NCBI GenBank assembly: GCA_964035545.1
Contig: OZ037773.1
Location: 9,949,751 to 10,013,750 of the forward strand
DNA: 64,000 bases
Reading direction: 5' to 3'
DNA from: Bugula neritina
Taxonomy: Eukaryota; Animalia; Bryozoa
Part shown: positions 9,567 to 61,888 of the stretch, piece after piece
Layout of the letters: every line of letters begins with the position of its first letter
How positions within the stretch are numbered: position 1 is the stretch's first letter
Translations under genes and position numbers: made by a program
Notes under the pieces: generated by a model
What the model saw: only the letters and a program-made list of their open reading frames with translations
The model's database searches: none
Told to the model about the DNA's origin: nothing

Positions 9567-12119
9567 ATGGGTAAGTTGATATAAGGTGTTTTTTTTTCTT
9601 TAATATTATATTATTTTTACTTATAAATTTATAACAACACTTAATATATTAACTTGAATTTGTGAAAAGGAACTAAAACTTGATATTCACGTATTGAGCA
9701 GTGGTAAAATCAGTTTTGTAATGATAATTTTTCACTTAAATATTTAAATAACCAATAATTTACCTAGTATTTTTTAAAATTTAAAAAAAAACAGTAAACT
9801 TAAACTAAACTTTTTACAGCAACTTTTTGAAAACATTGTGTGCAGCAATGTTATACATGCAAAAAAAACAGCAATGTTTTAGTAGACTTTCATAGCACTT
9901 CTATAATTTTTACTTGAAGTATTTTATCCCTACACAATAATTATATATAAATGAAATTTATAAAAATTTCACATATATTTTTAGTGTTTATGTTTTTGAG
10001 CCAAACTTTAATAGAGTTTTAAATGAAATCACAAAACAACATGAAGAGTGCTTAAAAGCTGCATAAAATAACAATGTTGAATTATTTTTTATTCTTAATT
10101 CAATTATTGCTTTATCATTTTACCATAATTGTTTGTATAATTTCAGACCGAAAAGTTTTGATCGTTCTCCTCCTTGCAGGCATCATTGGTGAGTTTACAG
10201 AAAATTTTTAAATCTAGTCATTATTGAAGTTAAATACGTTTTGTAAAACTGCAATAACTGTGTTTTTCCTACGCTAACTTTGGTTGATCTGATGAAATTA
10301 ATAAATTTAAATAAAATATCATTCTTAGTTCAAACTTAAAATCCTTTTGAAATAACATTTCTATGGTTTATGTTTTCAGGATGCATTGCAGCCAGCGGAT
10401 ATTACAGCCCTCATAAAGGTTCTCACGGAAAATGTAGGTATTCAAAATTTATGTGTGTAAAAATAAAGGAAATTTATTTTGGTTGCACTTCATGAGTCGT
10501 TTGAACAACTGGAATGAAGCTACAAAATTTGTATATATGTTATGCGTTCGTCATTAATTTCTTTTTATGCATTTGAGCAATAAATTTAAGACTACCAGTT
10601 TCTAAATTATCATTCTGATAGCATGTTATGCACAAATATATTTGAATTTGATTTATAAGCAATAAGTAACATAATTGATATTCCAATTTTGTTTTGCTAT
10701 AATAAGTTAGTCACTAATGCTAAATATTTTAAGATGCAGCCCCTACGGCATATATAGTCTTTGAGTTATTATTGCACATGTATTTTTTCTAACGAATAAA
10801 TTATATTTCAGCATACCGATACTGGGGAAGCTGGAGCAGCTGGTCCAGATGCTCTAAGACCTGTGGTACTGGAACTCAAAGCCGATCAAGAAGATGCCTG
10901 ACTAGATATGGATACCACCATGGCAGCAGCAGCAGAGGATGTTACGGCAAATCATACGAGACTAGATACTGCAACTACGGATGCTGCCCAGGTTAGTGGA
11001 TAACTCTTATAAATACGTAATGGATTTTTGTTGCTATGCTATTGTCAAGGCAACTATAGATAGCAAGCGATAAATATATTTAGAAGAGCTATATGTAATC
11101 AAGTCACTGAATGTGCAAACTAAAAGCACATTTCGGTAAAAGGGACTTAAAGTATGCAATATTTTCCACTATTATTTGCTATATTATAGTTATTGTCTCA
11201 CCACAATAAAAAACTCACGCAAGTTTAGAGTCACTATCCCTGTGAGAAACCCCTGATGGAAAGGGTTTTTGTTAGAACGGGCTAAGGACTTATTTAAATG
11301 AGGCACAGGAGCAATTATGACTGGATGCTCTTCCTAACATTACCAATGGCCTTTGTCAGGGCTCGAACCCATGACCTTCGTGTTTACTAGGCAAACGCTC
11401 TAACCCCTAGACCACGGCTGCTCCCTCACCACAATGGTATTGAGTATATAACTTATATGATAGGTGGTTTACAGATAATAATGTAACTTCACACATGCTA
11501 AAGAAACTTATTGATTGATTACAGTTAATGGAGGCTGGTCCTACTGGTCCAACTGGTCCAGAAGTCACCACAGCAAGGTCCAGACCAGAACCAGAACCTG
11601 TAGCAGACCTTACCCAAGATGTGGAGGAAAATACTGCAGAGGACCCAAGAGCCAAACCAGATGTGAGTCAAACGTATTTATAGACATCATATGTCAGTTT
11701 TTCAACTCATTAGCATAATTTTTTTCGCCAATCAATAAGTGACGGGGACTAAAGCATGCTGAAATGTGCTACTTATGAATTAAATATACAAGCAGAGCAA
11801 TATAGGGAACCTAACGTACTCTGTTGTTTTGGTTGAAACTTCACTGCTAAGCAAAGTTTCATTTAGAAATAAGCAATTAAATATTGTTTGGTAATTTTAT
11901 TAAAAAAATTCTATTTTGTAAAATGGTTAATGTTTTAAACAAAGTGTATAATAACTGGGTTAGTAAATCTAGACTGGCTAAATGTTGGACATGCAGAGTT
12001 GTATAATATTTTAATCACGATACAGATAATTGCTTGAAAATAATAAACACAATAAGGTAATACATTGTATGAAGACAAATCAAATGTATTCAATTCTTGC
12101 AGACTCTGGATACTACTAA
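9567..12119 (+). CDS. G2: secreted small basic Tyr-rich protein with TSR1 + reduced TSR2, 144 aa
   Basis: Exons 9567-9570, 10147-10188, 10380-10433, 10812-10991, 11525-11662, 12103-12119; intact frame ending YSGYY*; AATAAA 12284-12289. Confidence 0.92.
11208..11424 (-). mobile_element. tRNA-derived SINE, 217 bp, in G2 intron 4
   Basis: 11-bp TSD CTCACCACAAT (11197-11207 and 11425-11435); G1 and G3 carry the empty site. Minus strand has A-box TGGTCTAGGGG, B-box GGTTCGAGCC and a T-run 3' end. Confidence 0.93.
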
Positions 12120-20421: not shown

Positions 20422-22250
20422 TTAGTAATATCCAGAGTCTACAACAAGAAAACATGTTCACAGTTAGAAAGCTTTTATTCTATGTACAGCATATAGCAAA
20501 TCTTATGTATATATATAGCAAATTTTGTTAAATTTTATTGCAGTAAAAACATATTGGCATAATGATTTAATATGGAAATATACTAGCTTTTAGATGTAAT
20601 AATATGACCTTTCTTTAATATATTCAATATCATTAATTTCATTCAAGGTTTTAATAAATTGAATGTCATATTCTTATTTATTTAATTTTTGAAGAAAATT
20701 TGCTTCAAAATTCAACACCATAATTAAAAAAAAATTTGAAGTAAATTGGTTTATTGTGTTTTGTGAAACTCACATCTGGTCTGTTTGGTGGGTCCTCTGC
20801 AGTATCTTCCTCCACATCTTGGGTAAGGTCTGCTACAGGTTCTGGTTCTGGTCTGGACTTTGCTTCTGTAAGTTCTGGACCAGTTGGACCAGTATGACCA
20901 ACCTCCATCAACTGGACAGCATCCAGTGTTACATCGTCTAGTCTCGTATGACCTGCCATAACATCCTCTGCTGCTGCTGCTGTGGTGGTATCCGTATCCA
21001 GTTATGCATCTTCTTGATCGGCTTTGAGTTCCACCACCACATGTCCTGGAGCATCTGGACCAGCTGCTCCAGCTTCCCCAGTATTGGTAAGCTGAAATAT
21101 AATTTACTTCCTATTAAACTCTTGTGTAATGATTGCTATATTTATAATTATAATTTTACTTTATAAAACTTGAAAACTCAACAACTATAATGAGAAGTGA
21201 ACAGAAAATTTGGATATAAATCATGCCGTTTAATAGCTATATATCAGTCATATTCCGTGAAAATTTAGTAATAATTTCACTTTAGAAAATTTGAAAAAAA
21301 CTGGAAAAGGCATCAAACTAATTTGGTAAGTAGTTGTGCATAAAACTATATGTTTGTTGCCTGAATGCATAAAATGAGAAAAATTTCGTTATACAGTTGC
21401 TTATACAGATGATATGCACTTAAATCGCAACCAATATAATTTGCACAAGATTTTGTGCATATGTAAATTTTGAATACCTACATCTTCCGTGAGATACTCG
21501 ATGATGTCCACCTGGGTGGCCGTAGTATCCTGCAGCTGCAATGTATCCTGAAAGCAGAAACCGGAGCAAATGTTATTCAAAAGTATTATAGGTTTGGTGT
21601 TTATATACTTGCTTATTTTGATAGAATATGAAGTAAACTGGTGCGTCAGTTTTATCAAATTAGATTTAGCTTATTGACAGACACAGAGCATATAAATTGA
21701 TTCAATAATCTGATAAACTCACCAATGATGCCTGCAAGAAGGAGAACGATCAAAACTTTTCGGTCTAAAAACATACAAAGAGTTTCAATGAAATGGCAAT
21801 ACTATATAACAATTAAACGGGTAATTAACTTAGTTGCTAAGTTATGGAGCTCTTGAACAGTCATTAAGATTTTTTGTGATTTAATTTTTACTCTATAAAG
21901 AAGATCACACTGTTTGAAAAATAATGTAAACCCTGAGCGCATGTATGTTTACTTATATTTGATAACAATTTTCTATAAAGGTACACTAGTTTTATAGCAA
22001 AACTGGCTGAAGTCTAAGTTTAAAAATATAATTTCAAAGACTTTAGAAAATTTGGAATTGAAGTAATTTGGTTACAAAAATCTATATATATATATAAATT
22101 ATTGAAATTACTATTTATTAAAACTGCTTTTATTCTTACTCAAACCAAGTTGCAATTGTCGTTTGCCTACCTCAGGTTGATATTACAAAACTAAATGTAA
22201 AAATATTTAATAATATAAGACATTTAAAAACATTAATAAAACTTACCCAT
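20422..22250 (-). CDS. G4: secreted small basic Tyr-rich two-TSR protein, 148 aa, with the two TSR exons fused
   Basis: Exons 22247-22250, 21723-21764, 21482-21547, 20774-21091 (318 = 180+138 nt), 20422-20438; exon 3 encodes GYIAAAGYYGHPGGHHRVSHGR. Confidence 0.9.
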
Positions 22251-25234: not shown

Positions 25235-27237
25235 TTAGTAGTATCCAGAATCTACAAGATATAAAACTTGAATAAGTACACATGACAACACTTTATGCAA
25301 TTTAGTAACTTTTTGGGTTGATTACAGTTTATTAAAGTTTATGTTTATATTGTCTTAGTTTAGGCAATTAAATGAATCTTGTGTAATATATTCAACTATA
25401 TGTATATGTGAAATAGGCAGCCAAAGTATAAGTATCAGTTGTGTGTCATTTATATTATCCACTCAAAGGGTATACAAAGTTGTGATGAGTTAATATATCA
25501 CTGAATAAGTAATTAATTTTTTACTTTTTATGAAATTTTTCATCAGTTATTTTTCACCTCAAAAGAAAATTTTTAGCTTTTGAATTTTTATTTAAATTTT
25601 AATCAGTAGTAACTTGTACGAAATTTTCATCCACTCATAGTTATAGTCTGCTGGGCAAAGTTTTTCTTATATTTATATAATGTACAAAACTGAAAGATAT
25701 AAACTTGTCAGACTCACATCTGGTCTGTTTGGTGGGTCCGCTGCAGTATCTTCCTCCACATGTTGGTTGAGGTCTGTTACAGGTTCTGGTTCTGGTCTGG
25801 ACTCTGCTGTGGTAATTTCTGGACCAGTTGGACCAGTATGACCAACCTCCATCAACTGGGCAGCATCCAGTGTTGCATCGTCTAGTCTCGTATGAACTGC
25901 CATAACATCCTCTGCTGCCACCATGGTGGTATCCGTATCTGGTCTCACATCTTCTTGATCGGCTTTGAGTTCCACCGCCACATGTCCTAGAGCATCTGGA
26001 CCAGCTGCTCCAGCTTCCCCAGTATTTGTAAGCTGTAATACAATTTACTCCTTATATAAAACTCATGTTTAATAATTGCTATATTTGAGAATTTAGTAAT
26101 AATGTTACTTTATATAAAACTTGAAAACTCAACAACTTATGAGAAGTGAACATAAATTTAGAATATAAGCCATGTGAACGTTTAATTATCATTAGTTAAA
26201 ACTCAACAGTAATTGTGCAGAAAACTCTAACTTCATAAAATAATTGCTTTAAATTGTTTACTCCAATGCATTTTATATAAGAAAAAAAAATTAGTGTTAT
26301 AGCTTTACTACAGTCACTCAACCAGATCACATATGAAATGCAACCAAGCATAAGTTTTTTAATTTCTTACAGAAATAAAGTTTGAACACCTACATTTTCC
26401 ATGTCCTCCTGGGTGGCTGTATCTACCAGCCGCAAAGCATCCTAAAAGCAGAAACGAAAGCAAATGTCTGAGAAATCATTTTAGGTTTAAAGCAAAAATG
26501 AAAACTTGTTTATATACTTACTTATGCTGAAAAAAGTTTAAATAAACTGATGCCGAAGTTTTATTCAAATATTTTTAATTTAATAACAAACCCAGAGCAT
26601 ATAAACCAATTTATTAGTCTAACAAACTCACCAATGATGCCTGCAAGAAGGAGAACTATAAAACTCTTCGGTCTAAAAGTATACAAAAAAGTATTAATAT
26701 AAAACATGCATAGCCATGCTTATTAGACAGAAGGTATGTTCAATGGGTCATCTGTGTAGTGCAACATTGTGTAATGAAATATTACGTAATATTTGCTGAA
26801 AAGACTTTCATCTTGAAAAACCAAAATTGGTGGGAGTTAAAGGATTATTACTATAAATCATAAAAAGTGTGTTTACTAAAAAGTATGTTTATAATCATTT
26901 TAAACTTATATAGAGATTGCAAAAATTTTATTTAGTAAATTTTGTTTTAGTATTTTAAATGCTTTGATAAAATATAATAAACTTTATAAGTTTAACAATT
27001 AAATACATACTTGTTACCAAATTTTAGACTATATATAATATATTCATCCACAGTGTTGGCTGTTTTCATTGTAAGAGTTCAAATAAAATAATAACTTTTT
27101 AAATATTGTCTTGTAAGGTTTTAAAAACCAACTCATGTTAATATGCTCAATTTAATTATAAAATCAAAACTAAAACTAATACATATATATATAATATTAT
27201 AAAAAATTGAAAAACACCCTTATATCAACTTACCCAT
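25235..27237 (-). pseudogene. G5: small two-TSR paralog with a 1-nt deletion in the signal-peptide exon (pseudogene, null allele or assembly error)
   Basis: Exons 27234-27237, 26632-26672 (41 nt instead of 42), 26394-26441, 25718-26032, 25235-25251. Reads MDRRVL* (TAG); all other exons and splice sites are intact. Confidence 0.75.
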
Positions 27238-29729: not shown

Positions 29730-33608
<3,879 letters not shown>

Positions 33609-34030: not shown

Positions 34031-36648
34031 ATTAAAACAATTGTAATTGCTTTTGCATAATAGAAATTATCTAGAAAATATGATTAGCAAATTCAGCTAA
34101 GAGAATTTCAATCACGTCATATATAATGCATAGCATGTAGCTATACTAGCCCCAAACACAGCAAAGTGATTGTATAGCAAACGTTAACATCAACAGTTTT
34201 TTGCACAAAAGCCTTTTTATACTCTACAGAAACATGGATGTGTCTCACTAGAGAACTAACGCTGTCACCTCATGACCTCGCTGTCATCTCATGACCTTGC
34301 TGTCAGAAAAGCTGTGAATAGACACCAGCTCCCTTCAAGATATGACATTTTCTGTCTTATACAATAATGTTAAAAAAAATTGATTAAGATGTCATGTAAT
34401 GGTTATAATTATACACCATTATTTATATAATGTCATCCTTTTTAGATGGGAGCTTTTTTAATCAAAATATGGAGTTTTATGATCATGATATATCATATTA
34501 GATCATATTGCACTATTTTACATTATACTGCATTACATTATTTTATATTACTTTATGTTAAATTATATATAGCGTTATATCACTTTATACTATATTACAT
34601 TACATTATATTAAATTATATTATGTAATATTAAATATTGTTTTTTATATTACATTATATATTAATTTATTTTACAACTCATGTATTTTTTATAACATAAT
34701 TTTAAATGTAGAAAATGATATATTTAAATTTTTAAAATTCTTTGTTTCTTAAATTATTACTTATTATATCTACCAATACAGACTAAAAACGTTTAATTTA
34801 ATTCGTTTAGATTACCCTTTAATATTAAATTAATTATTGAATATATTTTTTAATTTCCACGCCTCCAGGATGTCACTGTGTTCCTATAAACTAATAAATT
34901 AGCAGCACAAAAGTACATGACTTACATAAAGTTATTAGAAAAGGTATTTATGCCAGTTCTAAGGCAACTACACCCTTTTCACTAATTAGGCTACGAAGTT
35001 AGGTAAATTATGCGTTGCTTGGTGACACAGGGTCTGCTAAAGTTATCATGACCTGAATGGTGCGCATCTAAAACTCTAATTGATGAAGAGTTTTTATAAT
35101 TCATGCTACAAATGATACACCCAGGAAAACTAAATGGATTTTTAACACTTGTGTCAATTAACTCGAGTTAGTAATTACTGTAGAAATACCTTAACCTTTC
35201 AAGTATGTATGTCTTGGGAAACAAGATGTAGATATATTTTATACTCTCAACTTACTTTGTATTTTGGTGATCGGCTTTTTTCAGGAACACACTACTATTC
35301 ATTAGACAAGCAGAACAGGAAATAAACTAGAAAGTAGTACACAAGATGAGAGCTACAAAAAGCTATAATAATAACAAAACAACTAGCTGAGAGAAAGTTG
35401 ATCACAGTAGTGAATAAAAGCATAGAAAGTCATGACTACGTATACTATGATAAATTTTTTTCGAGTGTGTGATGTATAAAACTTTCAATACTTTTTACCC
35501 GATAGGTTTTATATTCAATGTTTATATAACTTAATAAACTATATACATATCATACTAAACTATATACATATCATACATGCATATAAAGGAAATCAGTCTG
35601 TTTATAAAATGATTGGCTTATTATTAACTCAGACTGATACAGCTTTAACAACATTTTGCAGGAAAACAAATCAGCTTACACTGACACCTGAGTCATCAGA
35701 GTTTAAAGATTTTAGTGTAAAAAATCTTCAAAGTAATCTTGAACAAACAAAAAAGAATAAATCCTGTGTATTGTTTTCGAGCACACAGCTTAAGGACCAG
35801 GCATGTATATTTACTTTTGTAGGCTTGTTTATATTTTTATTTACTGAAAATATAACAACTTTATTCAATTCCTTATAAAACCCTCAACTGCAGTTTCTAG
35901 TTCACTGAATTTTATATAGATTGCAAGATTAGAAGAAGTATGGCATAATGTCTTTTCTAAAGAACTATAGCTTGCATAGGTTTACTAAAAAGTAGTTTTA
36001 TGTATTGCATTTCAATGTTTCTATACTTTTGCTACAATCTATTTTAGATGTAATATATATAACTTGATATTTACTATGTTTATATATAAGCTATTATACG
36101 TGTCATATGGCACAAGAAAAACTTTGGTTTCTAGTTTGCTAAAGTCGTTAAATTTCTAAACTTATCTTATTAAGACCATAATGTTGCTTGCTGTTTTATA
36201 TATTATATATGAATGTATTATATACGGTAATTTTTTATATGAAAAACACTAACAATAATTGCTATCATTGTTGCTATATTATTGTGTCAATTTTTGTGAA
36301 CTTGTACCTGCTTATGTTTTTCCTTCATTTAAAATGATTTGTAAACTTATAAACGCAGCTTTATGTGTTATCATGTAATCTTTGCTAATTAATGTTACAT
36401 AATATAAAATCATAATTTATTTTGTTCTCCAGCTACATTTATTATGTCATCTAGTGTACTAAAAATGACAATTATATAAGTTGTCAATAATGAAATAACA
36501 TGTTGTTTAGGTTTACATTTAATATAAAGCAATTATTGTTAAAACCTATAATAGAAAAACATAACTTTATAGAAGCAAGAATGCGTGAACATATAGAAAT
36601 AGAACATACAGCACGTTGCATCGTGTCCTTCTATGAACCCTGAATATA

Positions 36649-38545
36649 CTAATCATCAGCAGTTTCTCCATAAACTACAGAAATAATAAATACAACAACA
36701 TGAATATATGTATTATAAATATTGTAGGTGCATGTATCTAACCAATTAAAAGCAAATAATAAAGTGTTAAATAATTGAAATTGAAGAGCCCAAAGAGATA
36801 ATTTTAGACATTTAAATAACAATTTTAGGTTTTCGTGATTATAATGCTTAGTATTAAATTGAAAAGAAAGTTTTCAAACAATCTTTTTTTATAAATCTCG
36901 ATGAATAGAATAATTCTCTTGTGTCTAGCCACACATTCAGACAAGGAGTTCTGAATGTGTTTTCTTAAACAAATATTAGATCTTTTGCAAGAACAGCCAT
37001 CAATTAAGAAGTATTATTTACACTTCTGTCACTATATGGCATAACATAATGAACATGATATTATTAAAGGAAAAAGTTTTTTACCCCAAAATCTTTTTTA
37101 AAAACGTGATTTAAATTTCACATTCGACAACTTTATTTCATGGCATCTATTTAAAGCTGTAGATGTTGTAAGCTGCTTTGTTGCTATGACAACAGCTCAG
37201 TATTTTACTATTGCTAGAAGTTGCACACTCACCTCTGCAGCAGGCTCTGCAGAATCGATCTTTTGCTGAAAGTGGAACAGCTGGACGTCTGCTTCCGATC
37301 AAGGGGCGAGTAGTTGGGCATTGCATCATGTCACAAGTCTCGGAGCATTTTTCCAGGCTGAGCTGTGGTCTCGGGTTTGCTAAAAATAACTTATTTGTGA
37401 AAAAATGGGTGCGCAATAAAACCGTACTTCTTTTTGAAATATCTCACTTTATAGCCTATAGGAAAACAATATCGGAGCTTAACTTGTGTTACTACATATA
37501 CTTATAAATCAAATCAAGATACTGTATTTGGGTATAAAATGCTATTATAATTTAAAAATGACAATTTTAAACTTGGTGTTAAAATGCATAATAAAGGCAA
37601 AACTTCCTTAATCTTTTAAAGTCACTGTGGTAATATGTAAAATGTAATCATGATATTTCCTTATTTATTCTTAATGTGTTAGAAAAGTTTATACATGTAT
37701 CAGTTCTTCTAATTGGTCTGGGTCTCCTACGTCCACCTAGTCGTCTAGCCGAAATGCATCCTAAAAACATAAATCATAATAAATATTTTTACAAATTAGG
37801 ATTTGAGTTGTGAAGTGAAACAAATGATTTGTATAAACATGGCTGTTATGTCTGACTATGTCAATAAAACTGATAAAGTTTGCACAGTATATAAGACACA
37901 TACACTGAAATTTTATCAACAACATTTTAATTTAATAAGAAGCATAAGATAATTAAAAATAGTCTAAGATATATTCAGTAAACTCACCAATAAGGACTGC
38001 AAGAAGGAGAATTATCAAAACTTTTCGGTCTAAAAATAATAGTATGTAAGAACATATGATACTGCATGGTTAAACATTTCTCAGACTTCTTTAGCTAAAC
38101 AAAGTACAAGAACTTTTTGCAAAGATTTGAAGTTATATTTTAATCATGACAAATATTCTATTTATAGAGAGATAGTGTAGGTTTTAATTTATTGTGAATT
38201 TTCAAACAATTAAGTATAACAGTTAAATAAAATTTATGTCAAAATATGTAACTTGAAAAGAATTAACACACGTTTTTGCATCCTTAAAATAATACTATAA
38301 GTTATTATATATGTATATATAGTTTCATGACTATATAAAGTTTTCATTCATCATATAGAGCTAGGTAATACATAGGCATTCAATTGTTGTAGAGTTCAAA
38401 AATAAATAATAAAGTAAATAAAATTTATTTTAATATAATATATTTTAATATAATTATATTATATTTAATTTGCTCACACTGTTAAAATAAGAATATGCAA
38501 ATTGATATTATAAAAAATCAATAAACATTATACCAACTTACACAT
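36649..38545 (-). CDS. G7: secreted Arg/Pro-rich peptide with a six-Cys degenerate TSR-derived domain, 94 aa
   Basis: Exons 38542-38545, 37988-38029, 37695-37760, 37233-37379, 36649-36674. MYRKVLIILLLAVLIGCISARRLGGRRRPRPIRRTDTSNPRPQLSLEKCSETCDMMQCPTTRPLIGSRRPAVPLSAKDRFCRACCRVYGETADD*. Frame is open across all phase-1 junctions; the exon 3 donor (GTATAA) is weak. Confidence 0.78.
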
Positions 38546-38672
38546 GATGCTTTGAGCCGTAGTTTAGATTTCCGCTGAATCTGAGACTATGATTTGAAAT
38601 GTAAAACTCTCTCCTTATATACTCTAGAAAAGTCATCAATCTTTTTCTTTAAATTCTTTGGTTTGATGGTTC
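38546..38672 (-). promoter_or_regulatory. G7 5'UTR and core promoter of the G1-G5 type; distal block not retained
   Basis: Near identical to G1 4258-4385 including TATATAA, then diverges. Confidence 0.7.
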
Positions 38673-40247
38673 AATTTTCCGCAAAGAAATGCACTGAAAA
38701 TGCTTCAATTTATTTTTAATTATTAGTATTTGTGTGCTTAGTTAAAAGGAAATGATGCCTGTTTGTTTCATGTGATTGGCATCGCTAGCTACTAGACTAG
38801 GTGTCTAGAGATGATCATATCATTTAGTACTTGGAAAAAAATATTCATCCATCATCAAAGTCTATAACTACAGTATATGAAGCATCACTTTGAGTTAGCT
38901 TCAGCTCCCATATTGGTTGAATAAATACTGTAGTAGTTTCAATTAGTTTAATTGCTCACTCATTACTTGTTCGTTCAGCAGAGTTTATATCTCTTTTGTT
39001 AATGATGCTTTAAAGGTTATATAAGTGCAGTTATATAATTAGTAGACTGAGTAGCTATAAGTTACCAAATAACTACCATGAAGTACAGTTTTTACTACTA
39101 TCGATTAGTAGAATGCAGTTTGTGGAAGTACACTATGCTGAATAGCTAGTATATAGATATAAAATCATGATAAATACTTTATTCAATTATATAGAAAGAG
39201 CATTGAGTTGTATGTGTGAGGTGTGCAGAGTTGCATAATAACTTAACAATATATATTTTTGTAAGAAACATTCTACATAGAATACACTCCTATATGTTAA
39301 CTTGCAGCTGTTTATTACTTAAACACTCTATAATATAACACACTTCATCCATGCAACAATAAAATGCTTATATATGTTTTAGCTATCTGAGGGCTCTTGC
39401 TACAAAACTATTGCACCTAATTAGAGCTCTGTCAATAACATCTTCCTGTTTTTGCTATATGTATGTTTATGTATTATTTTCTTTAATTTAAACCAATGAC
39501 AAACAAACATTATTCACCATAATCAGAACAAGCAATGAAGAAGCAAAAAAGTTGCACCATTACTATCATTTTTAATAAGAAATTATATAAACTCTGTTAT
39601 TATATAAAAAATTATTGATAGCAAGCAGATGCTGGCATTAAAAGAATAAAATTTTAATGTAAACAAGTATAATTTATAGACTGATAAACTTCATGTGAAA
39701 CTATACAATTATTTTCAATAATCTGCAAAGCTTTTTGGATTTATCAAAATATTTCATTGCAGTAATTTTGTTGTGTTCAATCTATTTAATAAACACGTTA
39801 TAATTATGTTAACATTGCTTGTTTTCATAATAGATTCTTATACAAATTATTCTCATTAATGCTATATTATTGCGACCATGTTCTTTGTGTTGAAAATATA
39901 CAATTATTTTGTAAAATGCTGCAAGTTGATAAAAGTCTTCAAGCTATCTTCCCTTTGTTAATTTGACTTCTAAACAGAGCAGATTTGATTGCAAGTTACA
40001 TAATATACAAAGATATTTTTTTCAACCATAGCTGAATTTATTACATCATCTAACATGCCACAATTGCACAAAACATAATTATAAAAGTTATTATTAATAA
40101 AATATGTTGTTCATATACTATAAAGCAAGTATTTAAACCTATATTACACGTGTATAATTATGTGAAAGTAAGAATTCGTGAAACTAGAAATGGCTTTTCA
40201 AGGGGTATACAACCCTTAATCATATCTTTCTATAAATCTTTTGGCTC

Positions 40248-43200
40248 TTAATCGTTGGAAGTTTTTCCATAATCTACAAAACAATAAATACAATTAATTT
40301 GATATTTTTATGTTGAAAGGAGTGAAAAAGCAGACAAAATGCTATAATTATAAACTATTTAATAACATAATTTAGAAAGAGGTAATATCAATATATAAGA
40401 AAGAGAGTTTGGCTGATAATGCTTTATTCCAAAGTGGTATATTCAATTTCCAACATTAAAAAACTTCAAACTCTTCTGTTAGCTTAGAGTTTTCCTAAAG
40501 TTGCTTTTTATTTCTTTAGCTCTCATAATTTATTCACATCATCACAGCAACCATATCTGTTTTCCTAAAGCTTTGTTCGCGTATAAGTTGTATACAGTTG
40601 CAACTTTTATTTGGGAATTATCTGATCATGTACAATTTGGAGTTGCTCACCTCTGATCTCTTCTGGCTTTCCAGAGCAGTATTTCCCATTGCATGATGGG
40701 AAGGGTCGACTGCAAGTTCTTGTTCTCTTCTGGATGGTAGACTTGAGTCCACCATAACTCATCCAGTGTGACCAGTAGGACCATTGTCCATCAACTGTGA
40801 GTAGACATGGTCACCATTAAAGTTGCAAAATAAAAGATCAATATAACAAAATAAATATTATTTTCAGTTTTTTATCAGTGCAGGATAAATAGTCAAACTT
40901 TTTAAAAGTAATTTATTTTTGATATATTTTCAACATCAGTTAATTTTTGTTACTTTTATAATAAGCAATTATTTAGTGAGTTGAATTTGATTTAAATTTA
41001 AAACTTTTTTACTTTTGAAAGTATTATTTAAAGCGCCGACCTTATAAATTTCAAAAAAGAATATATAAGCCATTTAGATATTTACCGAGTTCTTAGAGTT
41101 TGAACAGGTTTTGATAAAAGAGTTAGAGACAGTATAATAACTGAACAAGTTTTTTTGTCAAGAATAATGAGTTCTTGGTTGTCAAAATGAGACAATTTAC
41201 CTGCACAGCAGCCCAAGGTACATGCCCGTCTCTCAACTACTGGACCAGTGCATCCATGTGCAAGCCTGGTGTCACAGTGCTTTACTCGACTTCGCACCCC
41301 AACTCCACAGCTTGTAGAGCAACCAGACCATGGACTGTACAGACTGGCAGTCTGTTGTGCTGTGTTAATGAAATATAGAACAATAAAATAAAGCAACAAT
41401 TACATAAAACATGCACTGTTCTAATAAAGAGATTGCATAGGTCTGCTCAAACAGCTGCAAGGAATAAAATAGTTATAACTGTGAAATACACTACAATAGT
41501 TAAAATATATACTGAGGTAAAAGTGGTTAAAGCTTCTGAAGATTTGGATTGATACTAAATGATATCTAGGTAGGAAACAAGCTAGATCTAAGTTGAAATT
41601 AGTTTTGTTGGATGTATTGAAAGACAAGTTATACATATAATATAAAAAGTTACCAAAATGAGGGAGTCCTAAAGATCCGTGGGCAACTGGTTGATAAACT
41701 TTTGGGTCTTGTTGTCCGCTATTTGGCACAGCTGGTGCATGGTGAGCTGGAGCCGGTGCATGGTGGGCTGGGGCCGGTGCATGGTGAGCTGGAGCTGGTG
41801 CATGGTGAGCTGGAGCTGGTGCATGTTGAACTGGAGCCGGTGCATGGTGGGCTGGAGCCGGTGCATGGTGGGTTGGAGCTGGCGCATGGTGAACAGGAGC
41901 TGGTGCATGGTGGGCTGGAGCTGGTGCATGGTGAGCTGGAGCCGGTGCATGGTGTGCTGGAGCTGGTGCATGATGAGCTGGAGCCGGTGCATGTTGAACT
42001 GGAGCCGGTGCATGGTGGGCTGGAGCTGGTGCATGGTGAACTGGAGCTGGTGCATGGTGGGTTGGAGCCGGTGCATGGTGAGCTGGGGCTGGTGCATGAT
42101 GACTTGGGGCCGGTGCATGGTCAACAGAAACTGATGTAAGAGGAACTGGAGCCGGTGCATGGTGGGCTGGAGCCGGAGCATGGTGGGCTGGAGCTGGTGC
42201 ATGGTGGGCTGGGGCCGGTGCATGGTGGGCTGGAGCCGGAGCATGGTGGGTTGGAGCCGGAGCATGGTGGGTTGGAGCCGGTGCATGGTGGGCTGGAGCC
42301 GGTGCATGGTGGGCTGGAGCTGGTGCATGGTGGGCTGGAGCCGGTGCATGGTGGGCTGGAGCTGGTGCATGGTGGGCTGGAGCCGGTGCATGGTGGATTG
42401 GAGCCGGTGCATGGTGTGCTGGAGCCGGTGCATGGTGGGCTGGAGCATGGTGGGCTGGAGCTGGTGCATGGTGGGCTGGAGCTGGTGCATGGTGGGCTGG
42501 AGCCGGTGCATGGTGGGCTGGAGCTGGTGCATGGTGGCCATGTCCAGCAATTATTGAGTGATGAGCAGCCATTGGTTTGTGCACATCATGGTAAAGCTGC
42601 TTTCCATGAACCGGCTTTACAGAGTCTGCTGAGATGTGGCCTGAAGCAGAAACAAAGTAAGAATATTAACATGCCACTGATATAGTATGGCTTCTAGTGA
42701 CTACATTGGAATATCCCACAGTTTGATGACAGTTTCTTTCTATAAAAGTTTCGTTCCCTCCACTGGGATTCAAACTGGAGACCTCTGGCTTTCAAGCTAA
42801 TCATTACACCACAAGAGCTACAGGGTGAACTCAACACTGAACTCTTTATGTTACAAAGTTAAATGCCTGTATTGAAAGTCAATTATCTTTTAAAACATTC
42901 CATAGCTCACTCAAACCATTACCCTTCAACTCTTAATACTGACTGATAAATGCAGGACATCACTCGAAATTTACTAGTTTAGTTTTAACATGAACCGTTC
43001 AATCTTTATATATTGCTATCTAACACATTTGATTACCTATTCAATTATAGTATGAGAAATATAATACTTACCAGCCACAATCACAAGCACTAGTATGGAA
43101 AGACTCTTGGTATCTAAAAATGAAAATGTTACAAGGTAAGCATAGAAGTAGCATAGAAATTATAAACAATGCAATCATTTTAGATCTCCAGATGTGTAAG

Positions 43201-43818
43201 AAGCATATAATATATTCCATCAATTGTTTTATGATTAGAAACTCATAAAAACTCCTAATTTTTATACAAATATAAACCAGCTGTTCACTTGTATTATTTA
43301 TGTTTTTTCATCGTTTAAATAAAACTGTAAACATGCATGCATGCTATACCACGTATTTATTTATTTTTTATTATCATTTTATTTACAAGTCAGCTGTGAT
43401 TCAACACTAGATTTTTTCACTTTTAAAGTAAACAGAACTAACTTAGTAATCTAAGAATACAATAAGACAAACACAAAAATAATTTTTGTTAAAAAATTAT
43501 ATAATAAATCATTTAATAAAAAGTTATAAAATTATAAAAAAATTGAATTTTTAAATGCCAAACAGGAAAACTTTTTATTTCGTTTAACATTTGACTTTTT
43601 AAAACATTAACAAATTGTAATAATACCATTTAGTTATTGGTAAATGATGTTTTTTGAATAAATATATTTCATGCAGCGTTTAAATCAAACTATTCAGATT
43701 ATTTACGATGTTGAACATTAAAATTTGATATAATACAATGCTCTATATGAATAAAAGGCAATACAGTAAAATAGAACTCTGTACAATAATAAAGTATTTA
43801 CTCTGTCTACTTACACAT
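40248..43818 (-). CDS. G8: secreted (HHAPAPA)n protein with C-terminal TSR1 + reduced TSR2, about 453 aa
   Basis: Exons 43815-43818, 43072-43113, 41654-42640 (987 nt), 41201-41359, 40651-40794, 40248-40273. MYTKSLSILVLVIVAGHISADSVKPVHGKQLYH...; ends DYGKTSND*. TATAAAA 43872-43878. Confidence 0.9.
42753..42826 (-). mobile_element. Degenerate tRNA-like SINE head in G8 intron 2
   Basis: Minus strand reads ccctgTAGCTCTTGTGGtg...gaggtctccaGTTTGAATCCcagtggaggga (A-box and B-box like); not seen in the homologous G6 intron. Confidence 0.5.
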
Positions 43819-52010: not shown

Positions 52011-52615
52011 TTAATAGCGTCCATAATCTGAAATGAAGTTAAAAGACATTGAGAGTTTACCAATTGTTGCTCGATAAAAATAAATATATAAGACGCTTGT
52101 TAACTTTAACTGCAATGCATAACAAGCAAGAGTCTAACAGAAGAACCTACGTCCACAAGATCTGTAGGGACAGTATCTGGTCTGGACACTGGATCCAACA
52201 CACCCATGGTGACCATAATTTCTACCGTAGACACAACGTCTTGATCTAGTCTGTCTCTCTCTCCTGCCACAGTGGTTGCTACATCTGGACCAGTGGGACC
52301 AATTGCCCCAAGTTCTGTACCCTAAAATGCCAAGAAATCGGTTTTTGCCATTTAATAAATTAAATAAAAAAATCACTTGAAGTAAAATAATGTTGGTAAT
52401 AGTTGTATATTAGTTAATGATAATACTTTGCTACATTAGAACTACTATATATATTATGCGTGTATTATATAATGTATATATATAGTATATATATACTAGA
52501 TTTATAAAGTTGTGCAATTTAAAATTCTGGAAACTACTTTGTGGTTATGCTTAAAACTTCGACTAAAAATGTTTATACCTTTACTCTCACATATTGCCAT
52601 CAGGTACGATAACAC

Positions 52616-52713
<98 letters not shown>

Positions 52714-54164
52714 GGTATCTCATTTATGCATTATACACCATATATCATGTAAGTTTTAACTATAACTTCCAAATACATACATTTCTATCAATTCTAAGAT
52801 TAAATGATATAACAATTTTAATGATTTAGATATAATTGAAAGTTTTTATTTAGAAAGAGCAGAAAAAAATCTCAATAATAATTTACACCTAATTTTCAAA
52901 ATAATTTCTATCAATAATGTTTGCATTGTAAACTAAAATTACCATCATGTAATGCCCTAAAGAGCTGTTTTCCTCGTCAAATATTCATTTTGATGTAAAT
53001 TTCAAAAAAGAGCAATTTTTGGACAAAAGATTTATTTCTATCACATGTTAATGCTTTTTTAAGCTTCAAGTTGAAATTGAACAAATTTCTATCATGAGTA
53101 GTAATATACGACTCATTAACGGATAAATTATTATTATGTTAACTTATAATTATATGAGTAAAAGTTAGACGACATTGCAGCACTAGCTATAGAATACTTT
53201 TGAAATGTATAGCCTAAGATCTACAGAATAAACTTACTTGATCCATGGATGACTCCACCGTGTCCCCCATGAGGAGCACCACTTCTATATCCGCCTCCAA
53301 CAATGCAGCCTAAGGAAAGCAAAGACTATTTATAATATCATATCTCTTTATTAAAAGAGTGAATTATACATCTAGCAACTTCCATGAGTAGCATCGCCCT
53401 ACAGATTTGTAGTCCTCTAGCTGCTTTACTGTTCTTAAAATGTAAAACCAGCAAAAAAAGAATCTATATAATTGTTCAAGAGATGTATATCTGATGTATA
53501 TTTTATTGTATACAGCTACTAATATATAATTATGAATATGCAGCTATATATAAAAATATAAGGAATAAAAATAATTCTCAGTAATTTAATTCTAATATTT
53601 ATTACTAAAATATAGCCACTTTAAATGATTGATACTAACTCACCCATTAGACTAGCCATAATCAGCACAGCAAAGACTTTGGTATCTAAAATGTTGAATT
53701 TACTATTATTACATATAACATTATAATATTATAATATTGTTATATATAACATAATATTATAATATTGTTATATATAACATAATATTATAATATTACTTCA
53801 GATATATTATCATACTATATAAATGTTACATAGAATGCAATATTATGTAACATGTAACATATACAATTGTCACAGTAGTATTATAATGCCACCAAGCTGG
53901 TATTACATAATATATAATCACCACAATAAAAAGAAATTAATGTACTTTATCATAATTTGTGTATAGCAATGTTACAATTCAAATTAAACTTTAAAGAGTA
54001 TAACAATTGATGTTTTCTATTTACTTTGGGAATAAAATTAAATAGTCAAGTCACACTTTGTGAATTTTTAACAAAATTGCATGTTACAACAGTTTATATT
54101 AAGTTAACTATAAAACAAAAGAATAAATAAATATTTACGAAAGAAAGAAAGAGTACTCACTCAT
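52011..54164 (-). CDS. G9: secreted basic Gly/His/Tyr/Arg-rich single-TSR protein, 101 aa
   Basis: Exons 54161-54164, 53644-53685, 53238-53309, 52151-52321, 52011-52027. MNTKVFAVLIMASLMGCIVGGGYRSGAPHGGHGGVIHGSRYRTWGNWSHWSRCSNHCGRRERQTRSRRCVYGRNYGHHGCVGSSVQTRYCPYRSCGHYGRY*. TATA 54245-54251. Confidence 0.88.
52618..52711. repeat. (TA)n microsatellite in G9 intron 3
   Basis: Directly visible. Confidence 0.97.
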
Positions 54165-54964: not shown

Positions 54965-56496
54965 AGGATTGAAACTGAAATCAAGATAATACTTTACAAT
55001 AAGATACAATTCAATGTGAAATATTACCTACATATTAATTATAATATTATCTCAATATATTCCTATAATATGATATATAAAATTAGAACAAAATAACTGA
55101 AACCACTTATTTAGTTTAAGAGATACGACATTTCAGAATCACTATAAGAATACTGCACTGGAGATTTCCTGTGATAATATTTGACTCGTAAAGATTATGC
55201 ATTGAGATAAGCTATAATTATGAGTTGAAGTTTGCCTTCCTTTTTTATTTGAGTAAAAATACAGCTATACTGCAGACAAGTAAAGACCCTGTAATTAATG
55301 TATAGGCTATATACAGCACGGCTACAAATGTTTATTATATATAATGATACTGTTGACTTCTCTACATTGTAGTTTAGTATAGGTGATGTATATATATAGT
55401 CACTCTGCTATATGTACAAGTTTAGAGTGAGCTATATAACAGTCTAGGTCAGTGCTGTTAAGATTATACTTACGAAGTATTCTCCAGAAAGAAAGCTTGC
55501 AACAATTTAGTTTCCTAAAATAAATTATTAGCACGGCTTTTGGAAAATAATAAAAAAATGCACCTGGAGTTAAATATGGAATAATGGCCATTACGTTTAT
55601 TTTTAGAATTTTAGATGAATTATGCTTTATATGTCAATAAATCACACGATATCAAAGAGGTAAAATACGGCTCCTGAGTGATTAATCATTATAGGTGTAA
55701 TAATATTTTCACAAGTTTAACGGACATGATGCTTTCATTGGGATCAAAAGAATGCTTTTACTAAACGGTTTAATAACCTCACATTAATCAAGAGTCCTGT
55801 TTCTATTATCGTGTAGCAGTCAAGCTTACAACAGCTTCTTTTCAAAAGCATTCTTGCGGAAAAAATACTCAAAATAGGAAGTTTTTTCATGGTATTAAAA
55901 CTAGACCAAAACCTGTCAGAATGTTGTAACACTAACACTTCTTTGATGCATCAACAGGGAACATAGAGAAATCTTTCACACTCTAATAAATAACTGGTGA
56001 AATGTAACGTGACAATGACAGTTTTAGCACTGGCAAGTCAATTTGTGGAAGCATGGATGAGACTGATTAATGACTTTTTACTGGTTTACAACAGATCCTT
56101 ATAACTTCTCTATATATTGTCAAGATCTATATTTAATTCAGATGGGAAACTGATCTAGACATTACTACGCACTATAGAAATGCTAAAAATTCCCATATCA
56201 AATTTTACCTAAAAATTTGCATAAAAAAAACACTGTACCACTTTGCCCGTTATCGCTCTTCCTTGTTAGCCTGGTATATTTTATTCCATTTGAATATCTA
56301 ATGCACAGTGTGAATAAATTAATAGAATTTTTGCATGAATTAGACAGTTTGACTTTTGAGTTGAATTTTATGCTTTTATGCAGTAGTGAGTAACTGCTAT
56401 CCCAACAAATTCAAGTTCATAATAGCTTATTTTTATTATATAGAGGTGAAGTTGTTTTTACGGGCTACCTGTAAAATAAATTCTTGCTCTCCTCAC

Positions 56497-57120
<624 letters not shown>

Positions 57121-58448
57121 CCCTTACTTGTCTCTTTCAATCTCCTACTTTGTGGTGCATTATAGGTAAAAAGCCTAACGGAAATGTCAAATATATTTGT
57201 CAATGCAATGAATACAGCTTTATAAAGTGTGTCATTGATTTGTAAAAAATACTTTTTTGAAGTTCAATAACAAATACTTTGCTGTCAACAGTAACATTCC
57301 TACATAATTTTCTATCAACAACAAAGATTTCTGACAACTTTCAGCTTTAAAAGATATGCTGATTAACAATGTAGTCATATGAATATAAGTTATATTTATA
57401 ATAATATAATATAATGTTGCGTGTTAATTCACACATTAAACATTACATTAACTGCATGCGGTTAATAACAAACTTTATCTAGTAAGATGGGATTAGTCTT
57501 TTCTTCTTCTTTCTTCTTCATGTAATAATATTATGCTTGCCACAAACAACAATTTAGTGAATGAAGTAAAAGGGTTAAACACGATAATATTTTTCTAAAA
57601 GCTAAATGAAAGATGTAAGGAGATTAACTTTATACAATACATATAGCCGGCACAGCTTTGTTACTATAATAAGTATAGCTTATATTCAGTTTAGTTTAAC
57701 TCAAAGTTTGCTGAAAGCTACATGATTCATTATAGAGTGTCTAAACAGCATTAATCAATTTCATATCCTACCTAAGCTGGGTGCAAATAGTACATAGATA
57801 CTGTATAGGAGATGAAAGTCAATTGACACAAATCTAAAAAAAGCTGCTGCAGCATTAGCAATAAATTCAAAATGACAAATAGCCAGACAGAATTATTATT
57901 GAAACTAAAATTTAAAAGTTCATTACCCTTATTATAGAAAATTGTAATTCCTAAATACATCTTTTTTGTTGAAAATTTCGAAATTATAATATATCATACT
58001 TTCTATTTTTACGTGTCTCTTAAAAAGAGATTGTTGACCTTTTCCATAGTGATTTAGGGCTGCGACACTTCCTACTAATAACTAAACTTTTAACTTAGGC
58101 TCAATTCATTTTGTTTAAAAACAATTGAAAATTGTCAATATAATTTATTACATTTAATTGTCTAAATTGAATATTTTAGGCCTGGACTGCCAGCATGTTT
58201 GAAACAATGACAATCAAAATATTTAGCAGAATGACATTATTTTGGCAGCAAAAGAAAATGTGTCGCATCCCAGCTTTGAAAACATCCTGTGCATTCTTTT
58301 ATGGAATGTTATGAATTATGTTATATCTGAGTTTCCCATCTTTCATATCAGTTTAAAAGTCACTACATCAATAGACTCTCCATCATTCAGAATCTATTAA
58401 CCTGGAGACTGGAGCTTCCTAGCTGCTAGACGTTCATACAAAGACATC

Positions 58449-61888
<3,440 letters not shown>

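What the first reader, a model, noticed from the sequence alone, without database searches (positions are those of the whole stretch)
36649..38545. G7: a TSR gene remodelled into an antimicrobial-peptide-like product
Seen: the predicted mature N-terminus is RRLGGRRRPRPIRR. The TSR exon has lost every Trp and the Arg ladder but keeps CSETC (equivalent to CSKTC) and C..CC (equivalent to C...CCP), six Cys in total, with an open frame and an acidic tail ETADD. The TSR2 exon is absent. Known: RRRPRP opens the proline-rich AMP PR-39; penaeidins combine a Pro/Arg-rich N-terminus with a six-Cys domain; mussel mytilin precursors have anionic C-terminal extensions. Inference: convergent origin of a defence peptide with a new disulfide pattern from a TSR gene. 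No homology to those AMPs is claimed.
Basis: partly seen in the sequence, partly recalled or inferred. Interest (0 to 1): 0.75.

Follow-up and report, generated by a model that had tools for sequence, protein, structure and literature searches.

The report
Bryozoan TSR gene turned cationic peptide

Summary
A five-exon, all GT-AG, minus-strand gene (38545-36649) encodes an open 94-aa product: a signal peptide, an Arg-rich N-terminus, a 48-codon exon with six Cys and no Trp, and the tail VYGETADD. There is no TSR2 exon.

Descent from a TSR gene is shown at DNA level. Promoter, exons and introns align with five small two-TSR paralogs. New here: G7 is a mosaic. Promoter to early intron 4 is small-class. 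The late intron, last exon, 3'UTR and poly(A) signal are large-class, so one recombination explains the TSR2 loss and the tail is inherited.

The proximal promoter (94/100) and signal exon (86-88%) are conserved. The Cys exon is only 50-53% identical yet keeps parental GC (53%), 5 of 7 Cys and an open frame, which neutral decay almost never reproduced. As a protein it is no longer a TSR (no Pfam hit; hhalign 0.8%) and it has no relatives among 1.84 billion proteins.

The antimicrobial reading is untested and weaker than stated. Cationicity is inherited, Pro is 11%, and the RRRPRP stretch depends on a weak splice donor. The scan has noted sister TSR clusters on this chromosome, but no G7-like copy.

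The parts
38546..38700 (-). Promoter and 5'UTR of small-class type, with a TATA box (TATATAAGG) at 38613-38621, 76 nt before the ATG
   Evidence: 80-82% identical to five small-class paralogs over 155-169 nt, and 94/100 (ungapped) to paralog C in the last 100 nt. Only 43-49% identical to the large-class promoters.
38542..38545 (-). Coding exon 1 (ATGT, phase 1)
   Evidence: ATGN|GTAAGT is present in all eight full genes of the cluster.
37988..38029 (-). Exon 2, the hydrophobic core of the signal peptide (phase 1-1)
   Evidence: 86-88% identical to the small-class exon 2. Same architecture as the annotated B. neritina protein P0001.
37695..37760 (-). Exon 3: end of the signal peptide (GCISA) plus the Arg-rich N-terminus. 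The weak donor CAT|GTATAA has its G at 37694; alternative in-phase donors have their G at 37730 and 37736
   Evidence: The exon start GATGCATT is shared with the paralogs. LGGR aligns with PGGH of paralogs E and F. See the GC step and donor analysis.
37233..37379 (-). Exon 4: the remodelled TSR1 exon (147 nt against 180 nt in the parents). Six Cys, no Trp, GC 53%
   Evidence: Positional homologue of the TSR1 exon, with homologous intron flanks. No Pfam hit. hhalign probability 0.8%. Neutral-decay simulation. AF2 predicts two helices.
37041..37232 (-). 5' part of intron 4, derived from a small-class intron 4
   Evidence: The blastn alignment with paralog B continues to 37041. Flank alignment.
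36675..36863 (-). 3' part of intron 4, derived from the last intron of a large-class (G8-like) gene
   Evidence: blastn 36863-36400 against 40446-40001 and the alignments. The 177 nt between 37040 and 36864 match neither class, and no TSR2 relic is found.
36649..36674 (-). Terminal exon encoding (V)YGETADD and the stop codon
   Evidence: Homologous to the G8 terminal exon (DYGKTSND*) and the G6 terminal exon (DYGKSSND*).
36400..36648 (-). 3'UTR of large-class type, with AATAAA at 36438-36443
   Evidence: The 491-nt block aligned here (last 190 nt of the intron, terminal exon and about 270 nt downstream) is 61% identical to G8 and 51% to G6, against 41-43% to small-class 3' ends. The AATAAA aligns in G6, G7 and G8.

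Best explanation
G7 is a lineage-specific mosaic gene of the Bugula neritina chromosome-9 TSR cluster, and it is probably live. SHOWN: One recombination or deletion joined two parts. The first runs from the promoter of a small two-TSR gene to early in its intron 4. The second is the last intron, terminal exon and 3'UTR of a large-class (His-repeat) TSR gene. All internal exons are phase 1-1, so the loss of the TSR2 exon kept the reading frame. After that, the promoter and signal peptide stayed conserved while the mature-peptide exons diverged at least as far as the introns. Even so, they kept an open frame, coding-type GC and 5 of the 7 parental cysteines. The parental C3 and C4 were both lost, and a new Cys arose at a former Ser codon, so the count is again even (six). 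INFERRED: The product is a secreted, ~74-aa, net +9, three-disulfide peptide that can no longer form the Trp/Arg-layered TSR fold. It may instead form a disulfide-stapled helix-loop-helix (CSETC on one helix, C-RAC-C on the other). It is expressed from the same promoter type, and so probably in the same cells, as the small-class TSR proteins. It most likely acts by electrostatic binding of its Arg-rich N-terminus to polyanionic surfaces. My odds for the specific role are: host defence/antimicrobial about 0.3; non-defence matrix or adhesive accessory about 0.3; other (signalling, inhibitor, toxin) about 0.2; no function about 0.15-0.2.
For: Gene model and open frame. Homology to five paralog loci over 0.9-1.9 kb. 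Exon 4 as the positional homologue of the TSR1 exon. Promoter of small-class type (80-82%, and 94/100 in the proximal 100 nt), not large-class type (43-49%). 3' module of large-class type (61% to G8 against 41-43% to the small class), with an aligned AATAAA. No TSR2 relic. Segment identities (promoter 80-82, exon 2 86-88, introns 47-66, exon 3 47-64, exon 4 50-53) and GC (exon 4 53% against introns 20-25% and parental exons 50-52%). Neutral-decay simulation to 52% identity: open frame in 0.4-0.5% of runs, at least 5 of 7 Cys kept in 0.28%, GC at or above 50% in 0 of 5000. Cys kept 5/7 against non-Cys 8/52, Fisher p=0.004. No longer a TSR: no Pfam hit at E<=10 while parental exons score about 39 bits; hhalign probability 0.8% against the cluster's own TSR1 profile. 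AF2: G7 exon gives two helices at pLDDT 69. The control parental exon gives three strands at pLDDT 80 and matches thrombospondin-1 and properdin TSRs. Charge and composition. Splice architecture validated by the annotated B. neritina protein P0001.
Against: Neither the word search nor the exhaustive search found the product, so it is absent from the searched collections of predicted proteins. Exon 4 is no more conserved than the introns, so a gene that was functional for long and died recently cannot be excluded. The neutral simulation uses substitutions only and a simple model. The Cys-retention test uses an alignment that is partly anchored on Cys. The G7 fold model is single-sequence and of modest confidence, its coordinates could not be inspected, and it has no PDB match. 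The exon 3 donor is weak and has a stronger-looking in-phase alternative. Co-expression is inferred from promoter similarity only.
Confidence: 0.7

Rival explanations
1. One reading: G7 is a gene-encoded antimicrobial or host-defence peptide. Its Arg/Pro-rich N-terminus and new six-Cys domain would work like penaeidin, hyastatin or PR-39-type peptides.
For: Secreted, net +9, with 8 Arg in the first 14 residues and two PRP motifs. RRRPRP is indeed the start of PR-39. The evolutionary mode (conserved promoter and signal, hyperdivergent mature part, retained Cys scaffold) is the one typical of defence peptides and toxins (established knowledge: frog-skin AMP precursors, conotoxins). The CX3C...CX3C pattern with two predicted helices recalls the alpha-hairpinin defence peptides.
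Against: No activity, induction or expression data. Cationicity and the acidic tail are inherited from the parental genes. Pro is 11-12%, below the 25% PrAMP criterion. The Cys spacing differs from penaeidin-1. The gene is a singleton, not an expanding family. The predicted helix 1 is acidic or neutral rather than cationic-amphipathic. The RRRPRP segment depends on a weak donor. The promoter is that of the TSR paralogs, not an independently evolved one.
Confidence: 0.3
2. G7 is a non-defence accessory of whatever extracellular material the cluster makes (cuticle, glue or matrix). It would be a small polycation that binds acidic or sulfated partners, co-secreted with the Tyr/His-rich TSR proteins.
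For: Same promoter type as the small-class genes, at 94/100 in the proximal 100 nt. It sits between two large-class genes carrying about 1 kb of His-rich repeats. It keeps the Y-G motif of the C-terminal tail that is shared across the classes (YSGYY, HYGRY, DYGK.., VYGE..). Polybasic segments are common in this genome's TSR families according to earlier scan notes (unverified leads).
Against: G7 has lost nearly all the Tyr, His, Gly and Trp that characterise the presumed material-forming paralogs (1 Tyr against 16, 0 His against 5, 4 Gly against 23). The function of the cluster itself is unknown, and I found no paper on it.
Confidence: 0.3
3. G7 is a non-functional relic: a recombination by-product that lost its TSR fold and is drifting, with a frame that is still open by luck or because the gene died recently.
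For: Exon 3 and exon 4 identity to the parents (47-64% and 50-53%) is no higher than intron identity. The TSR fold determinants are all gone. The exon 3 donor has decayed at 3 of 6 positions relative to the paralogs. No matching protein exists in public collections.
Against: Under neutral decay to the same divergence, an open exon 4 occurs in 0.4-0.5% of simulations, at least 5 of 7 Cys are retained in 0.28%, and GC at or above 50% occurs in 0 of 5000. The ATG, the donor GT and acceptor AG dinucleotides of all four introns, the TATA box and the AATAAA are intact. Promoter and signal exon are far better conserved than the adjacent introns. The net 33-nt length change in exon 4 is a multiple of three.
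Confidence: 0.17
4. The gene is real but uses the upstream donor (G at 37730). The mature peptide would then start RRLGG-P-NPRPQ..., lack RRRPRPIRRTDT, and carry a much lower charge.
For: GAC|GTAGGA shares GTAGG with the GTAGGT donor used by all five small-class paralogs (B-F) and keeps the +5 G. The homologous site has become GTATAA. Both are in phase 1.
Against: The 36 nt in question have 42% GC against 22-25% in the next 72 nt. They are open in frame and end at the positional homologue of the paralogs' donor. Donors lacking +5 G are used elsewhere in the cluster (GTAAAT in G8 and GTAAAG in G6).
Confidence: 0.3

Closest known systems
Small two-TSR secreted proteins of the Bugula neritina chromosome-9 clusters (for example UniProt A0A7J7J5T6, auto-named 'C9', P0001)
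   Same: The promoter, 4-nt first coding exon, signal-peptide exon, exon phases, position of the Cys exon, CS-x-TC, and R-x-C...CC-x-G at the exon end. Both are strongly basic, secreted products.
   Different: No Trp ladder, no Arg ladder and no C3-C4 pair. No TSR2 exon. A large-class 3' end. 74 aa mature against 127 aa. Tyr 1 against 16, His 0 against 5, Gly 4 against 23. No Pfam TSP_1 hit.
Penaeidins (shrimp) and similar chimeric crustacean peptides with a Pro/Arg-rich N-terminal part and a Cys-rich C-terminal part
   Same: The overall layout: signal peptide, unstructured cationic N-terminal region with a PRP motif, and a six-Cys C-terminal domain containing a CC doublet. Pro content is about the same as full-length penaeidin-1 (14%).
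   Different: No sequence similarity and no Pfam hit for the Cys exon. The Cys spacing is C-x3-C-x4-C-x22-C-x2-CC, against C-x-C-x11-CC-x5-CC in the penaeidin-1 sequence printed in PMC7736402. Different phylum and an independent origin from a TSR exon.
PR-39 and the proline-rich AMPs (PrAMPs)
   Same: The hexamer RRRPRP opens PR-39 and occurs at residues 6-11 of the predicted mature G7. G7 has two PRP motifs and a net positive charge.
   Different: Pro is 11% (12% in the N-terminal 17 aa), against at least 25% required and 49% in PR-39. G7 has a disulfide domain. Activity and intracellular target are untested. The motif depends on a weak splice donor.
Alpha-hairpinins (plant defence peptides and trypsin inhibitors with C-x3-C...C-x3-C on two antiparallel helices)
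   Same: G7 exon 4 has CSETC and C-RAC-C. AF2 places each on a predicted helix, at exon residues 8-17 and 38-47.
   Different: Six Cys rather than four. A Cys lies inside the second motif, which the family definition excludes. The Pro-rich loop has 27 residues between the motifs. This is an animal, not a plant, and it is not homologous. The model has modest confidence and no PDB fold match.
Secreted-peptide families that evolve with a conserved signal or prepro region and a hypervariable mature part (conotoxins, frog-skin AMP precursors); established knowledge, not tested here
   Same: Promoter and signal exon are conserved (80-94%), while the mature-peptide exons are at or below intron-level identity with the Cys scaffold preferentially kept.
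   Different: A single gene rather than an expanding family. Here the divergence also removes a recognised domain fold.

Membership tests
Thrombospondin type 1 repeat (Pfam TSP_1, PF00090) | Profile HMM score at or above the gathering threshold (21.6 bits) | tested here: not met
   No Pfam family at E<=10 for the 48-aa exon or the 98-aa ORF around it. Parental TSR1 exons score 38.8-39.7 bits. hhalign against the cluster's own TSR1 profile gives probability 0.8% with 8 columns aligned.
Thrombospondin type 1 repeat (Pfam TSP_1, PF00090) | Trp ladder (WxxWxxW) and Arg ladder (RxRxR) that stack to form the fold | tested here: not met
   0 Trp in the whole product. The parental QSRSRRC aligns with QCPTTRP.
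Thrombospondin type 1 repeat (Pfam TSP_1, PF00090) | Six-Cys set with the pairs C1-C5, C2-C6 and C3-C4 | tested here: not met
   C1, C2, C5 and the terminal CC are kept. C3 and C4 are both lost, and a new Cys sits 4 residues after C2. Actual disulfide connectivity is not testable here.
Thrombospondin type 1 repeat (Pfam TSP_1, PF00090) | Three-stranded elongated fold | tested here: inconclusive
   Single-sequence AF2 gives two helices at pLDDT 69 with no PDB match. The control parental exon gives three strands at pLDDT 80 and matches TSP-1 and properdin TSRs. The two runs differ in alignment depth.
Bugula neritina chromosome-9 small secreted TSR gene family (membership by descent) | Shared promoter, ATGN first exon, signal exon, phase 1-1 exon scaffold, and intron homology | tested here: met
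   G7 is a mosaic of the small-class 5' part and the large-class 3' part.
Proline-rich antimicrobial peptides (definition of PMC7736402, Box 1) | Proline content at least 25% | tested here: not met
   8/74 = 11% in the mature chain and 2/17 = 12% in the exon 3 part. Criterion.
Proline-rich antimicrobial peptides (definition of PMC7736402, Box 1) | Net charge at least +1; PRP motif (indicative only) | tested here: met
   Net +9. PRP occurs twice (RPRPI and NPRPQ).
Proline-rich antimicrobial peptides (definition of PMC7736402, Box 1) | Antimicrobial activity and an intracellular target (DnaK or the 70S ribosome) | not testable with these tools
   Needs peptide synthesis and assays.
Penaeidins | Sequence or profile similarity and the family's Cys spacing in the C-terminal domain | tested here: not met
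   No Pfam-A family hits the Cys exon at E<=10. The spacing differs from the penaeidin-1 sequence printed in PMC7736402. Only the two-part layout is alike.
Alpha-hairpinins (definition of PMC7191063) | Motif XnC1X3C2XnC3X3C4Xn with X not Cys, forming helix-loop-helix with the C1-C4 and C2-C3 disulfides | tested here: inconclusive
   CSETC and C-RAC-C are present, and both lie on predicted helices. However, the second motif contains a Cys, there are six Cys in all, and the loop has 27 residues. Disulfide connectivity is unknown.

The most novel reading that the evidence does not exclude
A thrombospondin repeat exon, freed by a recombination that removed its partner repeat, has switched from the three-strand Trp/Arg-layered fold to a new disulfide-stapled helical hairpin. 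It has become a secreted host-defence peptide, which would be the first gene-encoded antimicrobial peptide described in a bryozoan. It would also be a datable natural example of fold change within a tandem gene cluster in which all intermediates' relatives are still present side by side.
Probability: 0.15. Interest if true: 0.75.

Novelty: new variant of a known kind. Interest (0 to 1): 0.42.

Why it matters
If the gene is live, it is a clean, internally controlled case of how a new small cysteine-rich peptide can arise. The mechanism would be exon-scaffold recombination between paralogs, followed by wholesale rewriting of a domain while the promoter, signal peptide and part of the cysteine framework are kept. 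The parents sit a few kilobases away, so every step can be read from one locus: which Cys went, which was gained, and where the recombination joint lies. It also gives a concrete, cheap candidate to test for bryozoan innate-immune or secretion biology. My two literature searches on B. neritina (with 'thrombospondin' and with 'antimicrobial peptide') turned up no gene-encoded effector of this kind. If the gene is not expressed, the finding reduces to an unusually well-preserved recombinant relic in an expanding gene family, which is ordinary.

Tried and rejected
(1) Compensated-frameshift origin of the divergent exon middle or of the lost Trp ladder. The other two frames of exon 4 contain stops. 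One local similarity (frame 0 against the G8 TSR1 exon, z=4.1) and the frame-tracked DNA alignments were not consistent between paralogs, so I treat this as inconclusive and dropped it.
(2) TSR2 relic in intron 4: none found by blastn or tblastn.
(3) Relatives outside the genome. The word search found none. The exhaustive phmmer search over 1.84 billion representatives gave one hit, P0007. It is a translated 53-aa tandem repeat matching at about 26 bits per unit, which I judge to be chance. PDB sequence search: none. ESM Atlas: no usable hit. Exact 24-nt scan of metagenome contigs: none.
(4) Paralogs of the G7-type exons in the same genome: only self-matches for exon 4 and exon 3.
(5) Fold search with the G7 model: no match.
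(7) The bacterial promoter and terminator scan does not apply to a eukaryote and is disregarded.
(8) Literature on this family in Bugula: nothing specific found.
Searches were done exon by exon, by reference. The joined translation was made only inside local scripts to check frame and composition.
Full report
ORGANISM AND CONTEXT. The window is G000:C9:9949751-10013750 of a 216,009,554-base eukaryotic assembly with about 30% GC. A canonical paralog exon is 96% identical to a 147-aa Bugula neritina protein (UniProt A0A7J7J5T6, auto-named 'C9'). The published chromosome-level B. neritina assembly is 216.00 Mb (PMC11480708), so this is B. neritina. The window holds a tandem cluster of TSR genes. 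Five are 'small-class' genes, here called B to F: signal peptide, GYY/His-rich N-terminus, TSR1, TSR2 and a ...YSGYY end. Two are 'large-class' genes, G6 and G8, which carry about 1 kb of HH(A/E)PAPA repeats before TSR1 and TSR2 and end in DYGK(T/S)SND. There are also single-TSR genes. All eight full genes of the cluster (B-F, G6, G7, G8) start with the same 4-nt coding exon ATGN|GTAAGT.

OBSERVATION. On the minus strand, exons 38545-38542, 38029-37988, 37760-37695, 37379-37233 and 36674-36649 are all bounded by GT-AG and give an open 285-nt CDS of 94 aa. The product has a typical signal peptide ending GCISA. It then has RRLGGRRRPRPIRRTDT, a 48-codon exon with CSETC, a further Cys four residues on, and RFC-RA-CC. 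It ends in VYGETADD. The mature chain has no Trp and six Cys.

DESCENT FROM A TSR GENE. The G7 locus aligns with five small-class loci over 0.9-1.9 kb, at E values of 1e-53 to 1e-68. Exon 4 lies exactly where their TSR1 exon lies. The end of intron 3 and the start of intron 4 are homologous, and the exon begins with the same T|...ag|CA junction. CSKTC aligns with CSETC, and RYC-NYG-CC-P-G| aligns with RFC-RA-CC-R-G|. The exon is 147 nt against 180 nt in the parents, a difference of 11 codons. Exon 3 is also homologous: the same GATGCATT start, and LGGR aligning with PGGH of paralogs E and F. The Arg-rich N-terminus therefore replaces an already basic His/Tyr-rich one.

MOSAIC ORIGIN (new). G7's promoter and 5'UTR are of the small-class type. 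They are 80-82% identical over about 160 nt, and 94/100 in the last 100 nt including the TATA box, against 43-49% to the large-class promoters. The 3' end is different. The last ~190 nt of intron 4, the terminal exon, the 3'UTR and an aligned AATAAA are of the large-class type: 61% identical to G8 and 51% to G6, against 41-43% (background) to the small-class 3' ends. Intron 4 is small-class for its first ~190 nt (to 37041) and contains no TSR2 relic. Every internal exon of this scaffold is phase 1-1. One recombination or deletion between a small-class intron 4 and the last intron of a large-class gene therefore explains both the missing TSR2 exon and the tail. VYGETADD is the homologue of DYGKTSND, made more acidic by K-to-E and N-to-D changes. 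It is not a newly evolved anionic extension.

GENE OR RELIC? Identity of G7 to the small class is 80-82% in the promoter and 86-88% in the signal exon. It is 47-66% in the introns, 47-64% in exon 3 and 50-53% in exon 4, whereas the paralogs keep 91% identity among themselves in that exon. The mature part has therefore diverged at least as far as neutral sequence. Yet exon 4 has 53% GC, like the parental exon (50-52%) and unlike the introns (20-25%). I simulated neutral decay of a parental exon to 52% identity using the introns' base composition. It gave an open frame in 0.4-0.5% of runs, at least 5 of 7 Cys kept in 0.28%, and GC of 50% or more in 0 of 5000 (mean 34%, maximum 46%). Cys are kept 5/7 against 8/52 for other residues (p=0.004, with the caveat that the alignment is partly Cys-anchored). 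The ATG, the GT and AG dinucleotides of all four introns, the TATA box and the AATAAA are intact. Conservation stops at the edges of functional elements; intron 1 next to the promoter is unalignable. This points to selection rather than gene conversion. I put the probability that the gene is, or was until recently, under selection as a coding gene at about 0.8.

NO LONGER A TSR. Pfam finds nothing in the exon at E<=10, while parental TSR1 exons score about 39 bits for TSP_1. A profile of the cluster's own TSR1 exons recognises only 8 columns around CSETC (hhalign probability 0.8%). The Trp ladder and the Arg ladder are gone. The parental C3 and C4, a disulfide pair in canonical TSRs (established knowledge), are both lost. 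A new Cys arose where the parents have a Ser codon (AGC to TGC in the in-frame DNA alignment). The parents have 7 Cys in TSR1 and 3 in TSR2. A single-TSR gene in this window ends ...RSCG, with one Cys instead of CC. This fits an earlier scan note (s1-442916) that the extra Cys of the doublet bonds to TSR2. G7 kept the CC although TSR2 is gone, so the new Cys may be its partner. This is inference.

STRUCTURE. Single-sequence AlphaFold2 predicts two helices (exon residues 8-17 and 38-47), carrying CSETC and C-RAC-C, at pLDDT 69. This model has no PDB fold match. As a control, a parental exon folded with the cluster alignment gives three strands at pLDDT 80 and matches thrombospondin-1, properdin and BAI1 TSRs. 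A fold change is plausible but not shown.

RELATIVES. Exon 4 and exon 3 each match only themselves in the genome. Nothing was found by the word search. The exhaustive search of 1.84 billion representatives gave only a chance match to a tandem-repeat ORF. The PDB sequence search, the ESM Atlas and a metagenome pattern scan also found nothing. G7 is a singleton orphan at the protein level. The look-up of encoding contigs, which might have given an independent B. neritina allele, was closed.

THE ANTIMICROBIAL READING. It remains possible but rests on resemblance only, and several supports weaken on inspection.
- Mature G7 is +9 over 74 aa (+0.12 per residue). The small-class parent is +21 over 127 aa (+0.17 per residue), so cationicity is ancestral.
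- What is new is the loss of Tyr, Trp, His and Gly, and the concentration of charge (+7) in the first 17 residues.
- PR-39 does begin RRRPRP. However, G7 has 11-12% Pro, below the 25% PrAMP criterion (PMC7736402).
- The Cys spacing differs from penaeidin-1.
- The CX3C...CX3C pattern recalls the alpha-hairpinins (PMC7191063), but with extra Cys and a long loop.
- The RRRPRPIRRTDT segment lies between an in-phase GAC|GTAGGA and the weak homologous donor CAT|GTATAA. GC content (42% against 22-25% downstream) favours the long exon, but RNA data are needed.

The evolutionary mode does fit defence peptides and toxins: conserved promoter and signal, hyperdivergent mature part, retained Cys. It fits any fast-evolving secreted peptide equally well. 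I give host defence about 0.3, a non-defence matrix or adhesive accessory about 0.3, other roles about 0.2, and no function about 0.15-0.2.

PROCEDURE NOTES. Exons were searched by reference, and the joined translation was made only inside local scripts for frame and composition. Earlier scan notes were used as leads only.

VERDICT. TSR origin is confirmed and extended by the mosaic finding. The gene is probably live. The defence function is unproven. This is a new variant of a known kind, of moderate interest.

Noticed in passing
window 31050-32650 (-) and 41650-42640 (-): The two large-class genes flanking G7 are G6 (ATG at 33608, stop near 29734) and G8 (ATG at 43818, stop near 40248). Each carries an exon of about 1-1.6 kb of HH(A/E)PA(A/P)PA repeats (His/Ala/Pro-rich) ahead of TSR1 and TSR2. 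These exons account for the GC-rich, GC-skewed blocks at 30-34 kb and 40-44 kb.
   Followed up: partly
window 20754-21110 (-) and 25644-26051 (-): In small-class genes E and F, TSR1 and TSR2 lie in one continuous exon (CCP-VDGGW...). Genes B, C, D, G6 and G8 have an intron there, so E and F show intron loss within the cluster.
   Followed up: no
window 52040-53700 (-): Gene H is a single-TSR member. Its N-terminus is GCIVGGGYRSGAPHGGHGG..., its TSR exon ends ...RYCPYRSCG with one Cys instead of the CC doublet, and its terminal exon reads HYGRY*. This is consistent with the extra Cys of the doublet serving an inter-TSR bond.
   Followed up: partly
window 1925-4257 (-), 9567-12119 (+) and 15978-~18200 (+): Genes B, C and D encode identical TSR1 exons. 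B and C are about 89% identical even in their 3' flanks and lie head to head, which suggests recent inverted duplication or ongoing homogenisation.
   Followed up: no
window 56386-57245: A (CT)n microsatellite of about 0.8 kb. It explains the strong negative GC skew at 56-58 kb and produces spurious 'SLSLSL' and 'RERERE' ORFs.
   Followed up: yes
window 29790-29960, 52640-52710 and 61700-61830: Long (TA)n or (TATA)n microsatellites lie inside or next to cluster genes. One sits in the last intron of G6.
   Followed up: no
window 11200-11430 (+) and 42760-42830 (-): Introns of gene C and of G8 contain stretches that look tRNA-derived by eye (SINE-like). ARAGORN finds no tRNA gene in the window.
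   Followed up: partly
window 37147-37232 (-): The reading frame of G7 exon 4 stays open for 28 codons past the GTGAGT donor and adds three more Cys (...GECATSS...SCCH...). An intron-retaining transcript would therefore give a nine-Cys product. This is probably chance.
   Followed up: no
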